From contig NC_068994.1 in assembly GCF_001194135.2 (NCBI RefSeq), positions 1,859,462 to 1,914,509 of the forward strand: 55,048 nt of DNA, given 5' to 3'. This stretch comes from Octopus bimaculoides. Lineage: Eukaryota. Positions within the stretch are counted from its first letter, which is position 1; every line of letters begins with the position of its first letter. The position numbers and the translations under genes are program-made. Below the pieces are notes generated by a model, which was given only the letters and a program-made list of their open reading frames with translations, was not told the DNA's origin and did no database searches. Below are positions 1 to 52,925 of this stretch, one piece after another.

Positions 1-817
1 ATGTCAAAATAGGGTTGTTGTTAGGATGTGTATTTTTGATGGAAATATTATAAATATGTTGTGAAAAAACTGGTGAGTTATCGTTAACATCAATTATTTT
101 TATATGAACATGTAAAATTCCTTCTTTTGAAGGTTGTCCTCCATCATTAGCTATCACTTCTAGATTGTAACTATCTTGTATTTCTCTGTCTAGTTTGTCT
201 CCAAGAATAATTCCTATCTTTGCCCCTCCAGTGATAGTTTTCCTCACAGACAATATAAATGGATCACTAAATTGTTTCTTCAATTTATATGTAACTTCTG
301 AGTTTTCCATTCCAATATCTTTGTCGAACGCCTCAGGAATTAATTCTTCAGCACCTTCTCCATCACGCTCACCAAATGTCATATTTATTTCTGTTTGAGG
401 AAACTCTGGGCTGTGATCATTAATGTCTTCTATAATTACTTTTATTTTAATAATTTTCAAAAACGTCTTCCTTCTATGTACAGCAACTTTGATGTATCTA
501 ACACACTCTGATTCGTATGTACACAGTTTCTCAGCATCCAGTGTTTGAGCCGTGTACAATTTACCATCTTGTGTGACATTAAACAAATGTGAATTGCCTG
601 TTCTTTGTCTCTGTATTTGGTTGTATGTGATGAAGTTATTTCCTACAGGAGAGTCCGTTTCTTCCATTTGTGTGTCAGCAGCAATATCCCCAACAAAAGT
701 AAAGGGATTGCTTTCTTCTTCTACATGATAGCTCAGATCTACACAGACACAACTGTGTAGTAATAGATTGAGGACATTTGCAAGTAAGTACGTATTCCAC
801 ACACAGTCTACTTCCAT
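1..817 (-). CDS. Pcdh: Protocadherin A, 5' part of large ectodomain exon (signal peptide, EC1, EC2, start of EC3); continues beyond window start
   Basis: Colinear without indels (offset 3939) with the PcdhB ORF; ATG at 817 (MEVDCVWNTY...); my manual translation is open for 272 codons with DINDHSPEF, LDRE, ANDGG and DVNDNSPVF cadherin motifs. Absent from the ORF track because it has no stop within the window. Confidence 0.95.
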   Translation of the reverse strand, partial: MEVDCVWNTYLLANVLNLLLHSCVCVDLSYHVEEESNPFTFVGDIAADTQMEETDSPVGNNFITYNQIQRQRTGNSHLFNVTQDGKLYTAQTLDAEKLCTYESECVRYIKVAVHRRKTFLKIIKIKVIIEDINDHSPEFPQTEINMTFGERDGEGAEELIPEAFDKDIGMENSEVTYKLKKQFSDPFILSVRKTITGGAKIGIILGDKLDREIQDSYNLEVIANDGGQPSKEGILHVHIKIIDVNDNSPVFSQHIYNISIKNTHPNNNPILT

Positions 818-850
818 CACAGAATGTTAAATCATATCTCGTGATTTTAT

Positions 851-872
851 CTGAAATTACAGAAGAAAATGG
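851..872 (-). promoter_or_regulatory. 3' splice acceptor of PcdhA large exon
   Basis: Minus strand ccattttcttctgtaatttcag|ATAAAATC, 33 nt upstream of the ATG; same signal in PcdhB and PcdhC. Confidence 0.8.
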
Positions 873-1470
873 AATATTTTTATTGAAATATTTCAATGAA
901 AGCTGGAGGTTTTGGAAAGAATCTTTTGTTGAAAATTACATGTGAATTATGGTAAAGGTGAAAGAAAGGAGTGAACATTTATGATATGTCTTAGTGTATG
1001 TCATAGCAATGTTAAATATATTTTATCAAGAGAACCATTTTGGGGTATTACAGATGATGCATTTTCACTTATTACAAATATAATTCTACATGCGTTTACG
1101 GATTAATATAAAACCAGTGATTTAGTTTGTTAAAAGATAGAGAAAACAAGGTATATAATGGGAAATTTGCCCAACTTTGAAGTAGTTTAGAGATTTCTCC
1201 AAAAATGTTGAAACACAAAATTGACACGGGAGGTAACTGCATTGTTGGTACGTACAATGATTAATTATCTCCCTTATTTTAACATGACTTCATGAGACGT
1301 GTTACTATACATGGTCTGAAATACCATTTCTTGAAAATTTGAATATCCTTTATCTCTTTCTATTAACTAACCTGTCCATGAAATGACAGAATAGTGGATA
1401 TGTTACTCTGGATATAATAATGACTATCCCTTCACTATTAAGTTCAACATCAAATTTTCGTGATGCTGTT

Positions 1471-2790: not shown

Positions 2791-3146
2791 GTGGGTCAAA
2801 GGGACATGCAAACTCAGCTTTATAGCATATGTGCTGCACCTTGTCCACCACCACTAGGTCCTCTCTGTTATGCTCTAGCACCTGATCTGTTTCGATTGGG
2901 AAATCCAAATAATGTTGCTATATTTTTTTACCTAAGACATAGATTAATGTTTGTTAGTGTGATATTGTGTACTATATGTTTGGATACTGAATTGCATAAT
3001 AAGTAGGATACATCAAATGGAGAATAATATATTATGTAACATTAAAATTATTTATTCTAGAGTTTAAGGGAATATTTAAAATTTATTTCAAGAAAAGAAA
3101 ACATTGAAATCTGTAAAAATTCTCTCCAGAAATGAGAAAAACTTAC

Positions 3147-3315
3147 CAAAATTAGGAATGCTTCAACATTCAAATTAAAAGACGAGATTTCTTCAAGTTA
3201 ATAACTTAAAGTCATCCCATTTTGGTGAGAACAGAAGAATCTGTCAGTTGTCCCCTGTATCCAATAGCAACTGAGTTGGGCTTCAGTGTGTTAATCCCTT
3301 CCATTGGGAATGACC
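3147..3315 (-). other. Predicted 169-nt leader (5'UTR) exon of PcdhA
   Basis: Acceptor aatatattttag|GG (AG at 3317-3316) preceded by a CT-rich tract; donor TTTTG|gtaagt (GT at 3146-3145); 159/169 identical to 6851-7019 with the same length. Confidence 0.7.
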
Positions 3316-3469
3316 CTAAAATATATTTAGATATAACAATATTGTATTCCATGTTATGAAAATAAGAGGGAGAAGGAAAGAGAGAAATAGCTTTGACAAT
3401 AATTGATTTGTAATAATTCTCATTTACCATGATGTTTAGATGAGAGATAAAGAAGATAGATAGTGATTG

Positions 3470-3511
<42 letters not shown>

Positions 3512-3670
3512 GGTTTCACCGATGTAGCCATGGGGAAAATAGCATATACACTCACTGCTAAACAATGTTTGTATTCAGTAAAAGTGCATCCTGTTTTACA
3601 GAATTTAGAATGATTTATATATAATGTCATACAGACTGTACGAAATACATAGAAGTCTTACTGATATAAC

Positions 3671-3770
3671 NNNNNNNNNNNNNNNNNNNNNNNNNNNNNN
3701 NNNNNNNNNNNNNNNNNNNNNNNNNNNNNNNNNNNNNNNNNNNNNNNNNNNNNNNNNNNNNNNNNNNNNN
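3671..3770. other. 100-N gap, probably a placeholder of unknown size (also 7581-7680); 12 further gaps at 8408, 10445, 19811, 22357, 23952, 27756, 30890, 33236, 36607, 40995, 42114, 49258
   Basis: Runs of N in the sequence. Confidence 0.99.
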
Positions 3771-4756
3771 ACATACATCTTGAGAATATTCTTTGTTTGT
3801 GATGTTAATGGTTTTTCTACGAATAATTCCCCAGTTTGTTGGTTCAGTCTGAAATGACCTCGTGTACGTTCAGATGTTTCCGGACTAAAAAAATAAGTCA
3901 CTTTACCATTATTGCCAGAATCTGGGTCTTTTGCAGACAATGTCAAAATAGGGTTGTTGTTAGGATGTGTATTTTTGATGGAAATATTGTAAATATGTTG
4001 TGAAAAAACTGGTGAGTTATCATTCACATCAATTATTTTAATATGAACATGTAAAATTCCTTCTTTTGAAGGTTGTCCTCCATCATTAGCTATCACTTCT
4101 AGATTGTAACTATCTTGTATTTCTCTGTCTAGTTTGTCTCCAAGAACAATTCCTATTTTTGCTCTTCCTGTGATAGTTTTTCTTACAGACAATATAAATG
4201 GATCACTAAATTGTTTCTTCAATTTATATGTAACTTCTGAGTTTTCCATTCCAACATCTTTGTCAAAGGCATCTGGAATTAATCTTTCTGCTCCCTCTCC
4301 ATCATCTTCATCATATGTTATATTCAATTGTGTCTGAGGAAACTCAGGGCTGTGATCATTAATGTCTTCTATAATTACTTTAATTTTAATAATTTTCAAA
4401 AATGTCTTCCTTCTATGTACAGCAACTTTGATGTATCTAACACACTCTGATTCATATGTACACAGTTCCTCAGCATCCAGTGTTTGAGCCGTGTACAATT
4501 TACCATCCTGTGTGACATTAAACAAATGTGAATTGCCTGTTCTTTGTCTCTGTATTTGGTTGTATGTGATGAAGTTATTTCCTACAAGAGAGTCCGTTTC
4601 TTCCATTTGTGTGTCAGCAGCAATATCCCCAACAAAAGTAAAGGGATTGCTTTCTTCTTCTACATGATAGCTCAGATCTACACAGACACAACTGTGTAGT
4701 AATAGATTGAGGACATTTGCAAGTAAGTACGTATTCCACACACAGTCTACTTCCAT
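3771..4756 (-). CDS. Pcdh: Protocadherin B, 5' part of large exon (signal peptide, EC1, EC2, most of EC3); truncated by assembly gap
   Basis: ORF track 3605..4759; true ATG at 4756; motifs LDAEELC-x5-C, DINDHSPEF, AFDKDVG, LDRE, DVNDNSPVF, AKDPDSG; still cadherin-like (NILKMYV) at the gap edge. Confidence 0.95.
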
Positions 4757-4789
4757 CACAGAATGTTAAATCATATCTCGTGGTTTTAT

Positions 4790-4811
4790 CTGAAAGTAAA
4801 GAAGAAAATGG
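4790..4811 (-). promoter_or_regulatory. 3' splice acceptor of PcdhB large exon
   Basis: Minus strand ccattttcttctttactttcag|ATAAAACC, 33 nt upstream of the ATG. Confidence 0.8.
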
Positions 4812-5019
4812 AATGTTTTTATTGAAATATTTCACTGAAAGTTGGAGGTTTTGGAAAGAATTTTGTTGAATGCAACTAAGATTTTCAATTATGGTAAACA
4901 TGAAGTAATGCATATAATAGTTTTTATTTAAATATATATATCTGTTAACAAAATACGTGTGAGCATTATACACACACACACACACACACACACATACGCA
5001 CATATACATACATACATAA

Positions 5020-6275: not shown

Positions 6276-6850
6276 TTATGTATATATAGATATACTTTCT
6301 CACTTCCCAAGTGTTAAACTAATACATCTGTTTGTTGTTTACACACCCGTCTTCGTCTTTTGTTTTTTTTTGTAAATTCTCACTATATATATATATATAT
6401 ATTATGTGTGTGTGTGTGTGTGTCCAGTACTTCTAGACAACCAATGTTGGTATGTTTATGTCCCTGTGATTTAACAGCTTGACAAGACAGAACTTTTCTT
6501 TAAGGCCTGGTACCAGGTTTTAAAAAAGTTGCATGGTATCAGTTTGTTCAACTAAAATCCTTTAAGACAGTGCTGTGTCCCAACATGGCTGCAGTCTAAT
6601 GAGTGAAGCAAATAAAAGATAAAAGATATTACATACCATGATGTATTTTTAGCATGCTATTGTGTGATATATGACTGAATATCACATCATTAATAAGAAG
6701 AAATATCCATCGTCAACATGAAGGTGAAATAAAACTATATTTCCTTTACATTTCAAGAATTAAACAATTTCAAGCAATATTTAAAAAAGGAAAACTGATT
6801 TAATACTTAATTCTCTATAAAATTTCTCTCCAGAAATCAGAAAACCTTAC

Positions 6851-7019
6851 CAAAATTAGGAATGCTTCAACATCCAAATTAAAAGACAGGATTTCTTCAA
6901 GTTAATAACTTAAAGTCATCCCATTTTGGTGAGAACAGAAGAATCTGTCAGTTGTCCCCTGTATCCAATAGCAAAAGAGCTGGGCTTCAGTGTGTTGGTC
7001 CCTTCCATTGGAAATAACC
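6851..7019 (-). other. Predicted 169-nt leader (5'UTR) exon of PcdhB
   Basis: Acceptor aatatattttag|GG (AG at 7021-7020), donor TTTTG|gtaagg (GT at 6850-6849); paralogous to 3147-3315. Confidence 0.7.
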
Positions 7020-7363
7020 CTAAAATATATTGAAATATAATGACAATATTGTATTCCATGTTATGGAAATCAGAAAGATACAGAGAGAGAGAGAGTTTTG
7101 ACAGTAATTGATCTATGACGATTTTCATCGACCCTGATGTTTAGATTAAAGATGATGAATGTTATATATACAATAGTATATAATATATATATATGTACAC
7201 ACACACACACACACACACACAGTTAAAGATCTCATTGATGTAGCCGTGGGGAAAATAGCATTTACTCTCAATACTAAACACTTCATACAGTAAATATACA
7301 CTGGTTTATATCTAATGTTACATAAATTTGTTAATATAAGATTAGATATAAATCATGTAGCGT

Positions 7364-13860: not shown

Positions 13861-14085
13861 GTAAATTCGTGCGGGTGACACGTAAATTCGTGCGGGTGAC
13901 ACGTAAAAGCACCCACTACACTCTCTGAGTGATTGGCGTTAGGAAGGGCATCCAGCTGTAGAAACTCTGCCAAATCAGACTGGAGCCTGGTGTTGCCATC
14001 CGGTTTCACCAGTCCTCAGTCAAATCGTCCAACCCATGCTAGCATGGAAAGCGGACGTTAAACGATGATGATGATGATGATGATG
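13861..14085 (+). mobile_element. Young, 5'-truncated family C (GAT)n-tailed retroposon with a 21-bp tandem duplication at its 5' end
   Basis: Near-identical to 52493-52689; GTAAATTCGTGCGGGTGACAC occurs twice (13861-13902). Confidence 0.85.
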
Positions 14086-27484: not shown

Positions 27485-27912
27485 AGATCCCGAATCATCT
27501 CCCAGTTGTGTGTCTATTCGAGAGACCATCACGTCCCCATAGATCCCGAATCATCTCCCAGTTGTGTGTCTATTCGAGAGACCATCTCGTCCCTATAGAT
27601 CCCGAATCATCTCCCAGTTGTGTGTTTATTCAAGAGGCCATCTCGTCCCCATAGATCCCGAATCATCTCCCAGTTGTGTGTCTATTCAAGAGACCATCTC
27701 GTCCCCATCGATCCCGAATCATCTCCCAGTTGTGTGTCTATTCAAGAGACCATCTNNNNNNNNNNTCTATTCAAGAGACCATCTCGTCCCCATAGATCCC
27801 GAATCATCTCCCAGTTGTGTGTCTATTCAAGAGACCATCTCGTCCCCATAGATCCCGAATCATCTCCCAGTTGTGTGTCTATTCGAGAAACCATCTCGTC
27901 CCCATCGATCCC
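27485..27912. repeat. 56-bp minisatellite, at least 7 units (10-N gap inside)
   Basis: AGATCCCGAATCATCTCCCAGTTGTGTGTCTATTCAAGAGACCATCTCGTCCCCAT with unit starts at 27485, 27541, 27597, 27653, 27709, 27794, 27850. Confidence 0.95.
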
Positions 27913-41859: not shown

Positions 41860-42525
41860 GCACTGGTGGCACGTAAAGGGCACATTTTGAGCATTGGGCC
41901 TCATGGAGACAAAGTGGTTGAGTTCCTTTCAAACATTGGGGCACATGGAGGCAAAGCGACTGAGTTCCTTTCGAGTGTTGGGCCTCATGGAGACAAAGTG
42001 GTTGAGTTCCTTTCGAGTGTTGGGCCTCATGGAGACAAAGTGGTTGAGTTCCTTTCGAGTGTTGGGCCTCATGGAGACAAAGTGGTTGAGTTCCTTTCGA
42101 GTGTTGGGCCTCANNNNNNNNNNNNNNNNNNNNNNNNNNNCTGAGTTCCTTTCGAGTGTTGGGCCTCATGGAGACAAAGTGGTTGAGTTCCTTTCGAGTG
42201 TTGGGCCTCATGGAGACAAAGTGGTTGAGTTCCTTTCGAGTGTTGGGCCTCATGATGGCAATGACTGAGGCCTTTGGCATTATGTCCTGCTTGAGAAGAC
42301 GACCCATCAAGTCAAGCAAAATCGCAGTGGTAGCAACTATGGTGTCACACAAATGGCACCAATGCTGGTGCCATGTAAAAGCACCCATTACACTCTCAAT
42401 GGTTGGCATTAGGAAGGGTATCCAGCTGTAGAAACCATGCCAAAACAGACTGGGGTCTGGTGCAGCCTTCCAGCTTACCAGCTCCAGTCAAACCGTCTGA
42501 TCCATGCCAGCATGGACAATGGATG
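41860..42525 (+). mobile_element. Family C-related retroposon containing an expanded 42-bp minisatellite
   Basis: GGTGGCACGTAAAGGGCAC...[repeat]...GTAAAAGCACCC...GGTTGGCATTAGGAAGGGTATCCAGCTGTAGAAAC...CATGCCAGCATGG. Confidence 0.75.
41894..42253. repeat. 42-bp minisatellite, at least 7 units (27-N gap inside)
   Basis: TTGGGCCTCATGGAGACAAAGTGGTTGAGTTCCTTTCGAGTG with unit starts 41894, 41936, 41978, 42020, 42062, 42159, 42201. Confidence 0.95.
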
Positions 42526-45340: not shown

Positions 45341-45506
45341 ACAATGAAAGGGAAAAGCTCCCTTGACTAAGTGGCAGTGGTGGTGGTGGGGATTTGTGAG
45401 TTGGGGGAGGTGGCTTTATGCCAAGTGTTGGGAGTGTAGAGGATATATAAACATAATGGTAATCAATATGGCTATATTTATATCAGGTTGAAGATGGGGA
45501 AGTGTA

Positions 45507-45515
45507 ACTTACCAG
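45507..45515 (-). promoter_or_regulatory. 5' splice donor ending the PcdhC large exon (phase 0)
   Basis: CTG|GTAAGT, GT at 45512-45511, after codon 799 (…QSVLL). Confidence 0.85.
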
Positions 45516-47909
45516 CAGAACTGATTGAGGTCTTTTGTCAATGGTTGATGTGGTCCATTCACTTTGTGACTCATATTGAGGATAAAATTCGGCTTTAGTT
45601 TCTATCAACTGAGTATTCCTGGCCATCATATCATTGGAACTCCTGTTTAGTGTGTCTGATTTCTTCGTAACGCATGTATAATGGCTTTTTTCTCGGTCGG
45701 AGTTGATTTCCGTGATATACTGGTTGTTTCGGTTATTGTTACATCTGACCACACACAGAGTTATGGACACTACGATCGCCACCGACACTATCACAGCAGA
45801 TGTGACAATAACAATGACCCAAGTTAAGTTGATCATTTTATCAGACTTTAACTGGACGGTGGACAGTGCTGGAGATGTCTTGTTACTAACGGTCAGTGTC
45901 AAAGAGACAGTTGTAGTGGCTGACAGAACAGGAGTACCACTGTCTTTTACGGCAAACTCCAGTTGATAGGATCCAGCATCATTTTGGTAAACTGTCCGAG
46001 AGAATGCAAACACTCCTGTGTAAGGGTTAATCTCAAATAATAGTTTATCATTTCCACTGAGGATGCTGTATCTGAGGAAAGCATTTAAATGGCTGTCTCT
46101 GTCGGAAGCCCTCAGAACTGCAATTTCATTCTTACTCTGGGGATGATAATGGACATCAAGTGTGAAAGGGTTCACACCTGGGAAGGTAAAGTAAGGAGCA
46201 TTGTCATTTTTGTCTAAAACCTCCACCACCACATTGGCAGTGTTGTTCAATGGTGGAATTCCATTGTCTTTGACAAACACTTGGAACTTATATTGCTCCT
46301 GTTTTTCTCTGTCTAAGGAACTGGTTGTAGAAATAAAGCCATAACTTGTGATACGGAATGGTAGGGTCACTTTATTGTTACTCAACAAATGATAGGAGAG
46401 TTGTCCAGAAAGGTCTTGGTCTGGGTCAGTGGCATTGATGTAACCAATTGGGAAATTAGTTTTACCATTTTCATAAGTGAGGAATTTAAATACTTCTTTC
46501 ATAAACTGTGGTTGAACATCATTGACATCCATCACTTGAATGAAGAATTTTCTCTCTGTTTTCATTGAGGGAGATCCTTTATCTTCACATGAAATACTGA
46601 TGTCATAGTGGTCCCTAGTTTCTCTGTCCACAAATTTCTTTAATGTAATTTTATATTCTTTTGATCCTAAATCTAAAAGAAGGAATTTATCATGGTGTAG
46701 GCTACATTCCACCTCACCGTTCTGTCCAACATCATTGTCAATAACACTGACATAAGCTATGAAACTGCCGACTTTGATTCCTTCAGAAATGGCTGCTGTG
46801 TTCTCTCTCAGCTCAGTGACAAAATTTATGTCTATCTTAGGAACATTATTTTGTTGGTTTATTACATTTATTAAAACCATTGCTGTGGAACTTGAGGAAG
46901 GATTGCCCCCATCTTTAGCTTCAACAAACAACTTGTATGTCTGTTTTTGTTCGGAATTTAATGTTTTCTGTGTGAAAATTTCACCAGTCACTTCGTTCAG
47001 TTTAAAATAAGATTTGGCAATATCAGAGGTCGCAGAACTAATGTGATATGTGACTTTACCATTTTCACCTAAATCTAAATCACTAGCAGACAGAACAGTG
47101 ATTGGTAAGAATCTTCCATGTGTACTTCTGATAGAAACATTGTAAATATTCTGTGTAAATACTGGAGCATTATCGTTTTCATCTGTCACAGTTATTTCAA
47201 TATTCAGCACCCCTTGTTTTGGAGGAGATCCCCCATCACTCGCAATAATCTGAAGACTGTAACTGTCTTTCTCTTCTCTGTCCAATTTCTCATTAAGTAT
47301 TATAGCTAGTTTAGAACTCCCAGTGATTATTTTCTTCACAGATAACTTGAATGTCTCTCTAAATCTCCGTGTTAATTGGTAAGAAATCTTAGAATTCAAG
47401 TTGCCTACATCTTTGTCAACAGCATTAGGAATTGCCATTTTCAACCCAATTCCATCTCTCTCTGAAAACTTTAACATTACAGATTTCACAGCAAATTTTG
47501 GTTTATGATCATTCACATCTTCTATAATTACTTTAATTTTCAGAATTTTTAAAAATGCTTCACCTTTGTGGACAGCAATTTTGATCGTTTTAAAACATTC
47601 AACATTATATTTGCACAGAGATTCTGCATCAAGTCTCTGTGTTGTGTAGAGCTCCCCTCTTTTAGAAACATTGAATAGCTGTGAAACCCCTGCCTGCTTT
47701 TGCTGCAGCTGATTGAATGTAATAAGATTGGTATGTTGAGACAACATACCATCGAGGAAATGAGATTCAGCTGCCACATCTCCGACGTATGTTCCAATAT
47801 TCTTCTCCTCTTGTACACGGAATGTGATATCTATTGCAAAAGAAATGTCCAGGGAAGATAACAGCAAGCTCACAAGAGCCAACATGGTCCCAGCAGAGCT
47901 GGTGCACAT
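45513..47909 (-). CDS. Pcdh: Protocadherin C, complete large exon: signal peptide, EC1-EC6, TM (~aa 695-721), proximal cytoplasmic tail
   Basis: ORF track 45483..47909 (808 aa if unspliced); six cadherin repeats (DVNDHKP, DENDNAP, NQQNNVP, DVNDVQP, DKNDNAP boundaries), EC1 C-x5-C, hydrophobic TM LTWVIVIVTSAVIVSVAIVVSITLCVV. Met9 (47885) is an alternative start. Confidence 0.97.
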
Positions 47910-52084: not shown

Positions 52085-52925
52085 TCCTTCCTACTGGAGG
52101 CACAGGGCCTTAAATTTTGTGGGGAGGGGACTAGTTAATTAGAGCTCAATGATATGCAACATGGTGATCTCATATCAAGATAAACTGTGCGTGACCTTGC
52201 AGGTGGGGCTCAGTTAGAATTTTCTTCAGAACAAGCAGCCAATCCTGCTCAAAAGTTCCCTGAATAAGAGATGTATTTAGGAGGATGAAAAAATACACAT
52301 CTTTCTAAAGAATTTCCCCAAAGAATTCCTCTCAATACATGGCTTTGATGCTTCTCCACTACTTCTGCACATGATGATTAGGGACCGCCTGACTGGCCTT
52401 GTAGGGTTTTCGAGCGAGATCGTTGCTAGTGCCCCTGGACTGGCTCTTGTGCGGGTGGCACATAAAAGACACCATTTCGAGCGTGGCCGTTTTCGTGCGG
52501 GTGACACATAAAAGCACCCACTACACTCTCTGAGTGGTTGGCGTTAGGAAGGGCATCCAGCTGTAGAAACTCTGCCAAATTAGACTGGAGCCTGGTGTTG
52601 CCATCCGGTTTCACCAGTCCTCAGTCAAATCGTCCAACCCATGCCAGCATGGAAAGCGGACGTTAAACGATGATGATGATGATGATGATTATTATTATTA
52701 TTGTTATTAAGGCAGTAAGCTGGCAGACTCGTTTGCACACTGGGCAAAGAAGTATTTCGTCTGCCTTGACGTTCTGAGTTCAAATTCCACCAAGGTTTAC
52801 TTGGCTTTTCATCCTTTCAGGGTCGATAAAACAAGTACCAGTTGAACACTGGGGATCGATGTAATCATTTCACCCCCACCCCCACCCCTAAAATGGCTGC
52901 CCTTGTGGCAGAATTTGAAACCATT
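52085..52925. mobile_element. Stack of retroposons: D 3' end (-), E fragment, long young C copy (52380-52689, +), D copy (52710-52925, +)
   Basis: Each segment matches other copies in the window; the C copy abuts the E fragment and ends in (GAT)n. Confidence 0.8.

What the first reader, a model, noticed from the sequence alone, without database searches (positions are those of the whole stretch)
316..407. EC2 hypervariable patch between two otherwise homogenised protocadherin paralogs
Seen: by manual alignment PcdhA (1-817) and PcdhB (3940-4756) differ at 38 positions. 21 of them fall in this ~90-bp window at the start of EC2 (EINMTFGERDGEGAEELIPEAFDKDI vs QLNITYDEDDGEGAERLIPDAFDKDV; 9 amino-acid and 9 silent codon changes), 7 more at 181-250 (also EC2), and only 6 in 421-817 (signal peptide + EC1). 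Known: in vertebrate clustered Pcdhs, EC2/EC3 carry isoform binding specificity and largely escape gene conversion. Inference: the independently expanded cephalopod cluster shows the same mosaic, with EC1 homogenised and an EC2 specificity patch kept distinct. Elevated silent changes argue for escape from conversion or a tract from a third paralog rather than positive selection alone.
Basis: partly seen in the sequence, partly recalled or inferred. Interest (0 to 1): 0.72.

Follow-up and report, generated by a model that had tools for sequence, protein, structure and literature searches.

The report
Swappable binding-surface cassette in octopus protocadherins
Two neighbouring octopus protocadherin genes are kept almost identical by gene conversion, except for a 92-base stretch at the start of cadherin repeat 2 that comes in old alternative versions passed between neighbouring genes; the same arrangement occurs in the paper nautilus and resembles the vertebrate neuronal self-recognition genes.

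Summary
The window is Octopus bimaculoides chromosome CM046614.1.

Both genes are cut by assembly gaps. They belong to an array that also holds a third near-identical copy (D), a fragment (E) and a paralog F with an unrelated EC1.

Patch dS is 0.82 against 0.04-0.06 elsewhere, about equal to the Octopus-Argonauta divergence (0.7-0.8). The patch exists in two types. A and D carry one. B carries F's, identical over 60 bases including silent sites. B's patch was therefore moved by gene conversion and did not simply escape it.

The rest of EC2 groups by species, even between gene types whose EC1 differs by 40%. That shows concerted evolution.

A gapless Argonauta hians array of six 817-aa orthologues repeats the pattern. 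45 of its 53 variable residues lie in five short clusters in EC1-EC4.

By alignment, these clusters overlie the segments that hold known trans-interface specificity residues of vertebrate clustered protocadherins.

Selection for binding diversity is plausible but untested (omega about 0.2). The draft-assembly caveat remains.

The parts
1..817 (-). Gene A, 5' part of a protocadherin ORF (signal peptide, EC1, EC2, first residues of EC3; codons read from 817 down to 2). It is cut at the window start by a 2,844-N assembly gap.
   Evidence: Translation. tblastn to gene C. The gap next to window position 1 is seen in L004 10818-13661. The NCBI model P0158 starts with exactly this sequence.
316..407 (-). 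The reported patch in A: the EC2 cassette, residues 137-168 (strand 1 to strand 2 of EC2, up to the DKD calcium motif). A carries the 'ERDGEGAEEL' type, shared with copy D.
   Evidence: 21 of the 38 A-B differences lie here. dS is 0.82 and dN 0.167. Site patterns are (A,D)|(B,F) at 395, 380-346 and 316; A is unique at 407 and 345-326; B is unique at 391, 388 and 386.
208..245 (-). Second small patch in A: the EC2 strand 4 to strand 5 loop region, residues 191-204 (G198R, I204V).
   Evidence: 7 A-B differences, dS 0.70. The pattern is (A,D)|(B,F). It aligns with Pcdh alpha7 at about residue 160, inside the beta4-beta5 loop that contacts EC3 in gammaB3 (bioRxiv 10.1101/493106). The same G/R change is seen in A. 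hians at residue 199.
581..614 (-). Position of the EC1 cassette (cds 204-237, residues 68-79, IQRQRTGNS). It is identical in A and B but differs in copy D (MQQQWTANS) and in A. hians copies.
   Evidence: A and B against D differ at 10 of 34 bases. D against Ah2/Ah3 differs at 5-6 of 34. The segment aligns with Pcdh alpha7 residues 38-44, which include interface position 41.
818..985 (-). 5' flank of A that is still homogenised with B's flank. High identity stops about 115-170 bp upstream of the ATG.
   Evidence: 1-933 against 3940-4870 is 95% identical, and the match extends to about 985/4927 at 93%. The last 69 bp before the ATG are 94% identical in A, B and D.
3110..3564 (-). Non-coding element about 2.3 kb upstream of A's ATG. 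It is shared only with the matching places upstream of B and D and marks the age of the tandem duplication.
   Evidence: 82% identical to 6814-7280 and 79% to L004 17667-18032. It has no other copy in about 250 kb of fetched sequence.
3671..3770 (.). 100-N assembly gap that cuts gene B inside EC3.
3771..4756 (-). Gene B, 5' part of the ORF (signal peptide, EC1, EC2, most of EC3). It lies on a 3.8-kb contig (3771-7580) between two 100-N gaps.
   Evidence: Translation. Pfam Cadherin_2 at 28-113 plus Cadherin. Gaps.
4255..4346 (-). The patch in B: an EC2 cassette of the 'EDDGEGAERL' type. Its core is identical to that of paralog F (P0001 gene, 35.6 kb further along the array).
   Evidence: B-F differ at 8 of 92 bases overall and at 0 of 60 in cds 443-502. 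In the core (residues 148-160), B=F at 0% and B/F against Ah2/Ah6 at 10%.
4147..4184 (-). The small loop patch in B (TGRAKIGIV), also of the F type.
   Evidence: B-F differ at 2 of 38 bases and A-B at 7 of 38.
3773..3892 (-). EC3 cassette of B (residues 289-328, includes the Phe-X-Phe loop region). Here B and F diverge sharply.
   Evidence: B-F 48%, F-Ah6 26% and B-Ah0/Ah4 27% nucleotide difference. It aligns with gammaB4 residues 250-285, which include specificity positions 253 and 257.
6814..7280 (-). B's copy of the upstream non-coding element.
45483..47909 (-). Gene C, an intact 808-aa protocadherin first exon from another subfamily (about 50% amino-acid identity to A and B). It identifies the species and locus but takes no part in the exchange.
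   Evidence: 99% identical to P0038, protocadherin beta-16 of O. bimaculoides, on CM046614.1.

Best explanation
A and B are two members of a tandem sub-array of protocadherin genes on O. bimaculoides chromosome CM046614.1. The array order is B, A, D, fragment E, F, all on one strand.

The duplication is old. The only alignable non-coding flank is 18-21% diverged. The 5' coding region, from about 70-170 bp upstream of the ATG onward, is kept 94-100% identical by repeated short-tract gene conversion between paralogs.

A few short segments stand out from this homogenised background. They hold alternative sequence types about as old as the Octopus-Argonauta split:
- EC1, residues 68-79;
- the start of EC2, residues 137-168, which is the reported patch;
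- the EC2 strand 4-5 loop, residues 191-204;
- EC3, residues 289-328;
- in Argonauta, also the first residues of EC4.

The A-B patch exists because A and D carry one EC2 type (ERDGEGAEEL), while B carries the type native to the F gene lineage (EDDGEGAERL). B's copy arrived by conversion from F or a close relative of F. These cassettes are therefore exchanged between genes as units, while the sequence around them is homogenised.

Shown here: the mosaic itself, the concerted evolution, the sharing of the cassette between B and F and between genera, and the repetition of the pattern in a gapless Argonauta array.

Inferred: the cassettes form the EC1:EC4 and EC2:EC3 contact surfaces of an antiparallel trans dimer, as in vertebrate protocadherins. 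Also inferred is that selection for distinct homophilic specificities keeps the types from being erased.
For: Gene conversion:
- In the EC2 background (residues 169-190, 205-288), F differs from A, B and D by 3-6%, but from its own orthologue Ah6 by 16-19%. Ah6 differs from Ah0-Ah5 by 1-7%.
- In EC1, F is nearer to Ah6 (30%) than to A, B and D (41-42%). EC2 therefore groups by species and EC1 by gene type.
- F is 5% diverged from A and B only in cds 376 to about 860, and 35-50% diverged on both sides.

Age of the duplication: the upstream element is 79-82% identical, while the coding sequence outside the patches has dS 0.04-0.09.

Age of the patch: A-B patch dS is 0.82 and the Ah1-Ah2 patch dS is 0.76. 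The between-genus background dS is 0.71-0.79.

Cassette transfer:
- B equals F at 0 of 60 differences in cds 443-502, silent sites included.
- In the core, B=F and Ah2=Ah6. The type-2 cassettes differ by 10% between genera, against 21-38% between types.
- Along EC2, B alternates between runs identical to A and runs identical to F: 11 runs against 22.6 expected, reached by 41 of 200,000 permutations.

Repetition in Argonauta:
- Six colinear 817-aa A. hians paralogs in gap-free sequence have 45 of 53 variable residues in five clusters that span 98 of 817 residues. Only 2 variable residues lie in 363-817.
- Those clusters are the highest mismatch peaks of the whole 8-kb repeat unit.

Interface homology:
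- gammaB positions 111 and 125 and gammaA position 128 align with T147, P161 and E/D162.
- The loop patch aligns with the EC2 beta4-beta5 loop.
- The EC3 cassette aligns with gammaB4 250-285, which includes positions 253 and 257.
- Published structures place the EC2 beta2b strand, the beta4-beta5 loop and the EC3 Phe-X10-Phe loop in one interlocking contact (PMC5001838).
Against: - The O. bimaculoides sequence is a gapped draft (14 N runs in the window). Every copy's contig ends inside the ORF at a gap, and B's contig lies between two 100-N gaps. Linkage of B's EC2 to B's EC1 and flank has not been checked with reads.
- B's EC2 is an unusually clean mosaic of A and F. Switches fall within 11-28 bp of shared sequence, which an assembly step that mixed reads from different paralogs could imitate.
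- dN/dS in the patch is about 0.2, and at most 0.4-0.66 in the core, so there is no direct sign of positive selection.
- High mismatch density blocks conversion by itself. Old islands could therefore persist without selection.
- At the nucleotide level, the A/D type is not clearly closer to the Argonauta ERDG types (21-28%) than to other types. Sharing between genera is solid only for the F type and for the MQQQW EC1 type.
- No binding data exist for any cephalopod protocadherin. The interface mapping rests on pairwise sequence alignment to vertebrate proteins about 30% identical, and it is least reliable in EC1, where there is a 4-residue insertion.
Confidence: 0.72

Rival explanations
1. Neutral mosaic. 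The islands are what patchy gene conversion leaves behind. Once a short segment is about 20% diverged, heteroduplex rejection ends conversion tracts at its edges, so it persists and is only occasionally carried along whole. On this view the patch has no role in binding specificity.
For: - omega is about 0.2 in the patch in both species, and silent and replacement changes are raised together.
- Breakpoints fall at cassette edges in other pairs too. E against F breaks at the end of the EC1 cassette, and the P0014 gene against the P0010 gene breaks just after the DRDVG motif.
- The A. hians Ah3 pattern can be produced by a few contiguous tracts.
Against: - The same five segments stand out in two genera under different homogenisation regimes: coding-only in Octopus, whole 8-kb units in Argonauta.
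- All five align with segments that hold known interface residues in vertebrate protocadherins.
- In Argonauta, replacement changes are concentrated in the clusters, while changes elsewhere are mostly silent.
- The cassette core dN of 0.17-0.28 exceeds the between-genus background dN of 0.07.
Confidence: 0.3
2. Assembly artefact. B's EC2 (or A's) is a chimeric consensus of reads from several near-identical paralogs in a draft assembly. On this view the sharp patch between A and B is a switch between paralogs, not the sequence of one gene.
For: - The window has 14 N runs. A, B, D, E and F all end in gaps inside the ORF, and B's contig lies between two 100-N gaps.
- In EC2, B has only 4 private sites and otherwise equals A or F exactly.
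- The P0014 and P0010 genes are 100% identical for at least 330 bp up to their gaps, which could reflect collapsed reads.
Against: - B has private bases inside the patch (window 4325, 4327 and 4330, the equivalents of A 386, 388 and 391). These lie 4-11 bp from F-type bases and next to bases that F lacks, so a real molecule with this combination must exist.
- Switches occur within 1-28 bp, shorter than the word lengths usually used in short-read assembly (general knowledge; the assembly parameters were not checked here).
- Flanks are 18-37% diverged with large indels, so A, B and D are separate loci and not haplotypes.
- A gap-free A. hians assembly shows the same patches and the same fine mosaic, with Ah3 alternating between Ah1 and Ah2.
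Confidence: 0.1
3. Local positive selection or a mutation hot spot acting in place on a recently duplicated pair, with no exchange between paralogs.
For: 9 amino-acid changes in 32 codons, several of which reverse charge (G149D, R151D, E158R).
Against: - Silent divergence is raised about 14- to 20-fold, to the level of the between-genus divergence.
- B's version is base-for-base F's, and A's is D's.
- The same types occur in another genus.
Confidence: 0.03
4. A and B are two haplotypes of one gene that were placed in tandem by scaffolding.
For: B's 3.8-kb contig lies between 100-N gaps, so its placement rests on scaffolding alone. The coding identity is high.
Against: - Upstream flanks are collinear but only 63-86% identical, with indels of 0.5-1 kb.
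- A third copy, D, has an equally diverged flank.
- The orthologous array in A. hians has at least six tandem copies.
Confidence: 0.02

Closest known systems
Vertebrate clustered protocadherins (alpha, beta, gamma): region-restricted gene conversion, with diversity kept in EC2/EC3
   Same: - Tandem paralogs on one strand.
- Homogenisation of most of the ectodomain and of the 3' half. In A. hians only 2 of 53 variable residues lie beyond residue 362.
- The highest silent divergence lies in EC2/EC3 (PMC4978886, citing Noonan 2004b).
- The variable segments here align with EC2 111/125/128, the EC2 beta4-beta5 loop, EC3 253/257, EC1 41 and the start of EC4. Those are interface and specificity positions in solved structures (PMC5106212; PMC5001838).
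   Different: - This is an independent expansion in cephalopods.
- According to PMC9068888, these are whole genes, not variable first exons spliced to shared constant exons.
- The protected units are short cassettes of 10-40 codons, not whole EC2-EC3 domains. The rest of EC2 is the most strongly homogenised part.
- EC1 and EC4 also hold cassettes.
- The cassettes are exchanged between genes, and at least one type is shared between genera.
- Homophilic binding has not been shown for any cephalopod protocadherin.
Cephalopod protocadherin arrays as described by Albertin et al. 2015 and 2022 and Styfhals et al. 2019
   Same: The locus is part of the O. bimaculoides protocadherin-rich chromosome. 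Those papers already proposed recent duplication and/or homogenisation by gene conversion to explain very similar neighbours (PMC9068888; PMC6339937).
   Different: In those papers, conversion was offered as one possible reason for tree shape. My full-text searches found no report of breakpoints, cassette structure, silent-site profiles, sharing between genera, or mapping to interface positions.
Dscam1 alternative exon clusters of arthropods (functional analogue only)
   Same: Short alternative segments that sit at a homophilic interface and are combined independently to give many self-recognition specificities (general knowledge; mentioned in PMC6339937).
   Different: Dscam1 belongs to an unrelated protein family (Ig domains). 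Its diversity is made by alternative splicing within one gene in somatic cells. Here the diversity comes from germline exchange between separate genes.

Membership tests
Protocadherin (cadherin superfamily) | N-terminal Cadherin_2 (protocadherin-type EC1) followed by tandem cadherin repeats with DxNDxxPxF linkers and DxD calcium motifs | tested here: met
   Pfam PF08266 at residues 28-113 and PF00028 in B. Gene C has PF08266 plus 5 cadherin stretches. The linker and calcium motifs are invariant in alignments A1 and A2. The best solved relatives are delta and clustered protocadherins, E = 1e-44 to 1e-72.
Protocadherin (cadherin superfamily) | Six or seven EC repeats, one transmembrane segment and a cytoplasmic tail in one protein | tested here: inconclusive
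   A and B are cut by assembly gaps after EC2/EC3. Their A. hians orthologues are full-length 817-aa proteins with a transmembrane segment and a tail. Gene C in the window is a full 808-aa ORF.
Concerted evolution by interparalog gene conversion (as in vertebrate clustered protocadherins) | Part of the gene groups by species while another part groups by gene type | tested here: met
   EC1: F-Ah6 30% against F-A/B/D 41-42%. EC2 background: F-A/B/D 3-6% against F-Ah6 16-19%.
Concerted evolution by interparalog gene conversion (as in vertebrate clustered protocadherins) | Coding sequence far more similar than the flanking non-coding DNA of the same duplication unit | tested here: met
   In O. bimaculoides the flank element is 79-82% identical and most of the flank cannot be aligned, while coding dS is 0.04-0.09. 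This is not met in A. hians, where whole 8-kb units are 97.5-98.9% identical.
Concerted evolution by interparalog gene conversion (as in vertebrate clustered protocadherins) | Significant mosaic of site patterns along the alignment (recombination signal) | tested here: met
   Runs test: 11 runs against 22.6 expected, reached by 41 of 200,000 permutations. Maximum chi-square: 21 of 2,000. GENECONV, RDP and 3SEQ were not available.
Clustered-protocadherin-type diversity pattern | Silent divergence peaks in EC2/EC3 and is lowest in EC5/EC6 and the cytoplasmic part | tested here: met
   In A. hians, peaks lie at cds 201-300, 401-500 and 1001-1100, and cds 1201-2400 is almost invariant. In O. bimaculoides only EC1-EC3 can be read, and the peaks lie at the same EC2 places. 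One difference from vertebrates is that the peaks are short cassettes and also occur in EC1.
Clustered-protocadherin-type diversity pattern | Variable first exons spliced to shared constant exons | not tested
   PMC9068888 states that cephalopods do not use this arrangement. Noticed only: the NCBI model of gene C extends 29 kb downstream to further exon(s).
Clustered-protocadherin-type diversity pattern | Variable residues lie on the antiparallel EC1-EC4 trans-dimer interface and set homophilic specificity | not testable with these tools
   Only alignment to published residue numbers was possible: gammaB 111/125 and gammaA 128 = T147, P161 and E/D162; the loop = alpha7 about 160; the EC3 cassette = gammaB4 250-285. 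No coordinates, dimer model or binding assay were available.
Diversifying (positive) selection on the patch | dN/dS above 1 in the variable segment | tested here: not met
   omega is 0.20 for A-B, 0.20-0.36 for the A. hians patch and 0.44-0.66 for its core. The windows are very short and pairwise, so power is low.

The most novel reading that the evidence does not exclude
Octopod protocadherins bind through the same antiparallel EC1-EC4 dimer as vertebrate ones. Their specificity is written in four or five short cassettes: the EC1 loop, EC2 strands 1-2, the EC2 beta4-beta5 loop, the EC3 Phe-X-Phe loop region and the first strand of EC4. Selection has kept these cassettes as ancient alternative types since before the Octopus-Argonauta split. 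Gene conversion recombines them between tandem genes, which amounts to a germline cassette-shuffling system for making new self-recognition specificities. This system would have evolved convergently with the vertebrate clustered protocadherins.
Probability: 0.3. Interest if true: 0.85.

Novelty: new member of a known kind. Interest (0 to 1): 0.66.

Why it matters
Cephalopods and vertebrates each expanded protocadherins on their own while evolving large brains. Whether the cephalopod genes form a recognition code is an open question.

This locus shows the evolutionary signature that, in vertebrates, goes with isoform-specific homophilic binding. Homogenisation spares only short segments, and those segments align with the trans-interface. 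The signature is present in two octopod genera.

That makes the question directly testable. The analysis names the exact residues to swap: A/B 143-168, 198 and 204; EC1 68-76; EC3 289-328. It also supplies natural near-isogenic pairs (A and B; Ah1, Ah2 and Ah3) that differ almost only in these cassettes.

It also gives a clean case of concerted evolution in which one region groups by species and another by gene type.

Finally, it warns that the present O. bimaculoides assembly and annotation are unreliable in this array. Genes are truncated at gaps, and a 1,044-aa model fuses four genes.

Tried and rejected
**Dead ends**
- An exact-sequence look-up of gene C and of P0001 found nothing on record. 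The locus was reached instead through P0038 and through P0158, a cluster member of P0001.
- The first homologue search with B found nothing closer than 67%. A is hidden inside the fused model P0158, which clusters under P0001.
- No donor for either patch type exists in the window itself or in L001-L003. All other paralogs there are about 67% identical.
- Noonan 2004 (PMC353213) and Rubinstein 2015 (PMC4624033) are not held in the library. Their content is cited only through PMC4978886 and PMC5106212.

**Hypotheses considered and rejected**
- Haplotypes: the flanks are too diverged.
- The upstream 0.4-kb element as a dispersed repeat: it occurs only upstream of A, B and D.
- In-place positive selection: the silent sites are shared with other genes.
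- B's patch as a very recent copy of the present F over its whole length: B-F differ at 8 of 92 bases, with B-private and F-private sites in the first third. Only the core and the C-terminal part are identical.

**Not attempted**
- Structure prediction, because the tools return no coordinates, so interface distances could not be measured.
- The representative-protein search, because clustering at 50% identity cannot resolve near-identical paralogs.
Full report
**1. The observation**

An ungapped comparison of window 1-817 with 3940-4756 gives 38 differences. 21 lie in 316-407, 7 in 208-245, 6 in 421-817 and 4 in 1-101.

Both genes are on the minus strand. The codon table gives exactly 9 replacement and 9 silent codons in residues 137-168.

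No permutation out of 200,000 places 21 differences in 92 bp.

Nei-Gojobori estimates:

| Region | dS | dN |
|---|---|---|
| Patch | 0.82 | 0.167 |
| Small patch | 0.70 | 0.067 |
| Remaining 226 codons | 0.06 | 0.004 |

Pfam puts Cadherin_2 (EC1) at residues 28-113. The patch follows the DINDHSPEF linker, so the domain labels are correct.

**2. What the window is**

Gene C (45483-47909, minus strand) is 99% identical to O. bimaculoides protocadherin beta-16 on the 60.6-Mb record CM046614.1. The window is CM046614.1:1859462-1914509.

It is a gapped draft with 14 N runs. The 100-N run at 3671-3770 cuts gene B. Locus L004, reached through a cluster member of the nearest annotated paralog, shows that window position 1 abuts a 2,844-N gap, so A is cut too.

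L004 reveals the rest of the array, all on one strand:
- B;
- A;
- D, a third near-identical copy;
- E, an EC1 fragment;
- F, the P0001 gene.

Each of these ends in a gap inside its ORF. NCBI's 1,044-aa model XP_052828948.1 strings pieces of A, D, E and F together.

**3. Separate loci, and an old duplication**

High identity between A and B ends 115-170 bp upstream of the ATG. Beyond that the flanks are collinear but only 63-86% identical, with large indels.

A 0.4-kb element 2.0-2.3 kb upstream is present only before A, B and D, at 79-82% identity. Haplotypes are excluded. The duplication is much older than the coding identity suggests.

**4. The patch among four paralogs**

In all six pairs of A, B, D and F, the 92-bp patch is more diverged than the EC2 sequence beside it.

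Sixteen sites, all within cds 423-610, split (A,D)|(B,F), silent sites included. A has a private run at window 326-345, and B has one at 386-391.

F is unrelated to A, B and D in EC1 (35% nucleotide difference) and again after cds 870 (about 50%). It is only 5% different in between.

Along that block, B alternates between runs where it equals A and runs where it equals F, with 1 difference in about 160 bp in the F-like runs. There are 11 runs against 22.6 expected, a result reached by 41 of 200,000 permutations.

D differs from A and B in a second cluster, in EC1: cds 204-237, IQRQRTGNS against MQQQWTANS.

E equals F (95.7%) only from the end of that EC1 cluster onward.

Another pair elsewhere in the array, the P0014 and P0010 genes, is 30-50% diverged through EC1 and the patch-equivalent. 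It is then identical for at least 330 bp.

**5. An independent test in another genus**

P0147 of Argonauta hians is 77% identical to B and has the same signal peptide. Its locus has no N runs and holds tandem 817-aa copies.

Three copies differ at 28-57 of 2,400 bases, and the differences cluster at cds 207-235 and 382-478. These are the same two places as in O. bimaculoides.

Six colinear proteins differ at 53 positions:
- 45 lie in residues 69-78, 128-167, 199-203, 290-328 and 359-362;
- only 2 lie in residues 363-817.

Patch dS is 0.76 and the rest is 0.02-0.04.

Whole 7.6-8.1-kb units are 97.5-98.9% identical, and the coding clusters are the highest mismatch peaks of the unit.

The copy Ah3 alternates between Ah1-like and Ah2-like runs. 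Fine mosaics therefore occur in gap-free sequence as well.

**6. Gene conversion demonstrated**

The next gene in the Argonauta array, Ah6, is the orthologue of F. Percent nucleotide difference:

| Region | F vs Ah6 | F vs A/B/D | Ah6 vs Ah0-5 |
|---|---|---|---|
| EC1 | 30 | 41-42 | 39 |
| EC2 background | 16-19 | 3-6 | 1-7 |

EC1 follows gene type and EC2 follows species, independently in both genera.

**7. Origin of the A-B patch**

In the cassette core (residues 148-160), B=F and Ah2=Ah6. These two groups differ by 10%, which is below the 16% species background. All other type pairs differ by 21-38%.

The EDDGEGAERL type is therefore native to the F lineage and has been copied into B, and into Ah2 in Argonauta.

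A and D carry ERDGEGAEEL. This resembles Ah0 and Ah5 in protein sequence, but not clearly in nucleotides (21-28%).

The A-B patch dS (0.82) equals the between-genus background (0.71-0.79).

**8. Likely function**

Alignments to solved protocadherins give these equivalences:

| Octopod position | Vertebrate position |
|---|---|
| Patch residues 143-168 | alpha7 108-133 |
| T147 and P161 | gammaB 111 and 125 |
| E/D162 | gammaA 128 |
| G198R | alpha7 about 160 |
| EC3 cassette | gammaB4 250-285 |
| Ah 337 | gammaB 294 |
| Ah 359-362 | gammaB4 314-317 |
| EC1 cassette | alpha7 38-44 |

Published work supports an interface role for these positions:
- It names 111:294, 125:253 and 128:257 as EC2:EC3 specificity pairs, and 41 as an EC1:EC4 determinant (PMC5106212).
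- It places the EC2 beta2b strand, the beta4-beta5 loop and the EC3 Phe-X10-Phe loop in one contact (PMC5001838; bioRxiv 10.1101/493106).
- It reports that vertebrate EC2/EC3 largely escape conversion (PMC4978886).

This is inference from homology.

**9. Comparison with what is known, and verdict**

Gene conversion in cephalopod protocadherins has been suggested only in general terms (PMC6339937; PMC9068888). Four full-text searches found no fine-scale analysis.

The mosaic and its likely link to specificity hold. However, EC2 as a whole is homogenised, EC1 has its own cassette, and B's patch was imported from the F lineage.
- The main caveat is the draft state of the O. bimaculoides assembly.

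Noticed in passing
L004 10001-42924 (window 1-817 and about 32 kb to its left): The NCBI model XP_052828948.1 ('protocadherin Fat 4-like, partial', 1,044 aa) joins the 5' parts of A, D, E and F plus a cytoplasmic exon into one protein. It is an annotation artefact caused by the gaps. A, B and D have no gene models of their own.
   Followed up: partly
L004 gaps at 7048, 10818, 20742, 29372 and 42925 (window 3671-3770 and the window start): All five copies break off at an assembly gap inside the ORF, 0.4-1.3 kb after the ATG. This suggests that the 3' halves are too alike to assemble. It fits the near-invariant residues 363-817 of the Argonauta copies.
   Followed up: partly
L001 10001-10861 and L002 10001-10864: The P0014 and P0010 genes, 55-130 kb apart, are 30-50% different through EC1 and the first strands of EC2. 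They are then 100% identical for at least 330 bp up to their gaps. This is either a very recent conversion tract starting just after the cassette or collapsed reads.
   Followed up: partly
L004 28998-29371: Fragment E is an EC1 whose first half is unlike any other copy. Its second half is 95.7% identical to F, and the switch falls at the end of the EC1 cassette (…QLQQEWMESSQ|LFNV…).
   Followed up: partly
L005-L007 (A. hians BAAFZT010000119.1:60249-121063): Among the six Argonauta copies, EC2 residues 165, 167 and 199 vary together with the EC3 cassette 290-328 (Ah0 and Ah4 against the rest). The EC1 cassette varies together with 359-362 at the start of EC4. An EC2:EC3 / EC1:EC4 dimer would predict this, but contiguous conversion tracts explain it equally well.
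   Followed up: partly
window 18949-47909 (L003 10001-38961): The annotated gene for gene C (P0038, 816 aa) spans 29 kb, and its C-terminus differs from the 808-aa ORF. At least one small downstream exon is therefore spliced on. The neighbouring 828-aa gene's range ends about 40 bp inside gene C's first exon.
   Followed up: no
window 13887-14084 and 52492-52689; L001 15947-16149 and 20853-21038: A roughly 200-bp element is 98-99% identical at four places in the cluster, in both orientations. It is probably a young dispersed repeat.
   Followed up: no
window 27485-27912 and 41894-42254: Two minisatellites: a 56-bp unit with about 7.5 copies at 95% match, interrupted by a 10-N gap, and a 42-bp unit with about 8 copies.
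   Followed up: no
window 146-148 of the A/B protein (NMT / NIT) and A. hians NLT / NFT / NFS: An N-x-T/S glycosylation sequon inside the EC2 cassette is kept in A, B, D and six of the seven Argonauta copies, although the residues around it change. F (NVM) and Ah6 (IHLT) lack it.
   Followed up: no
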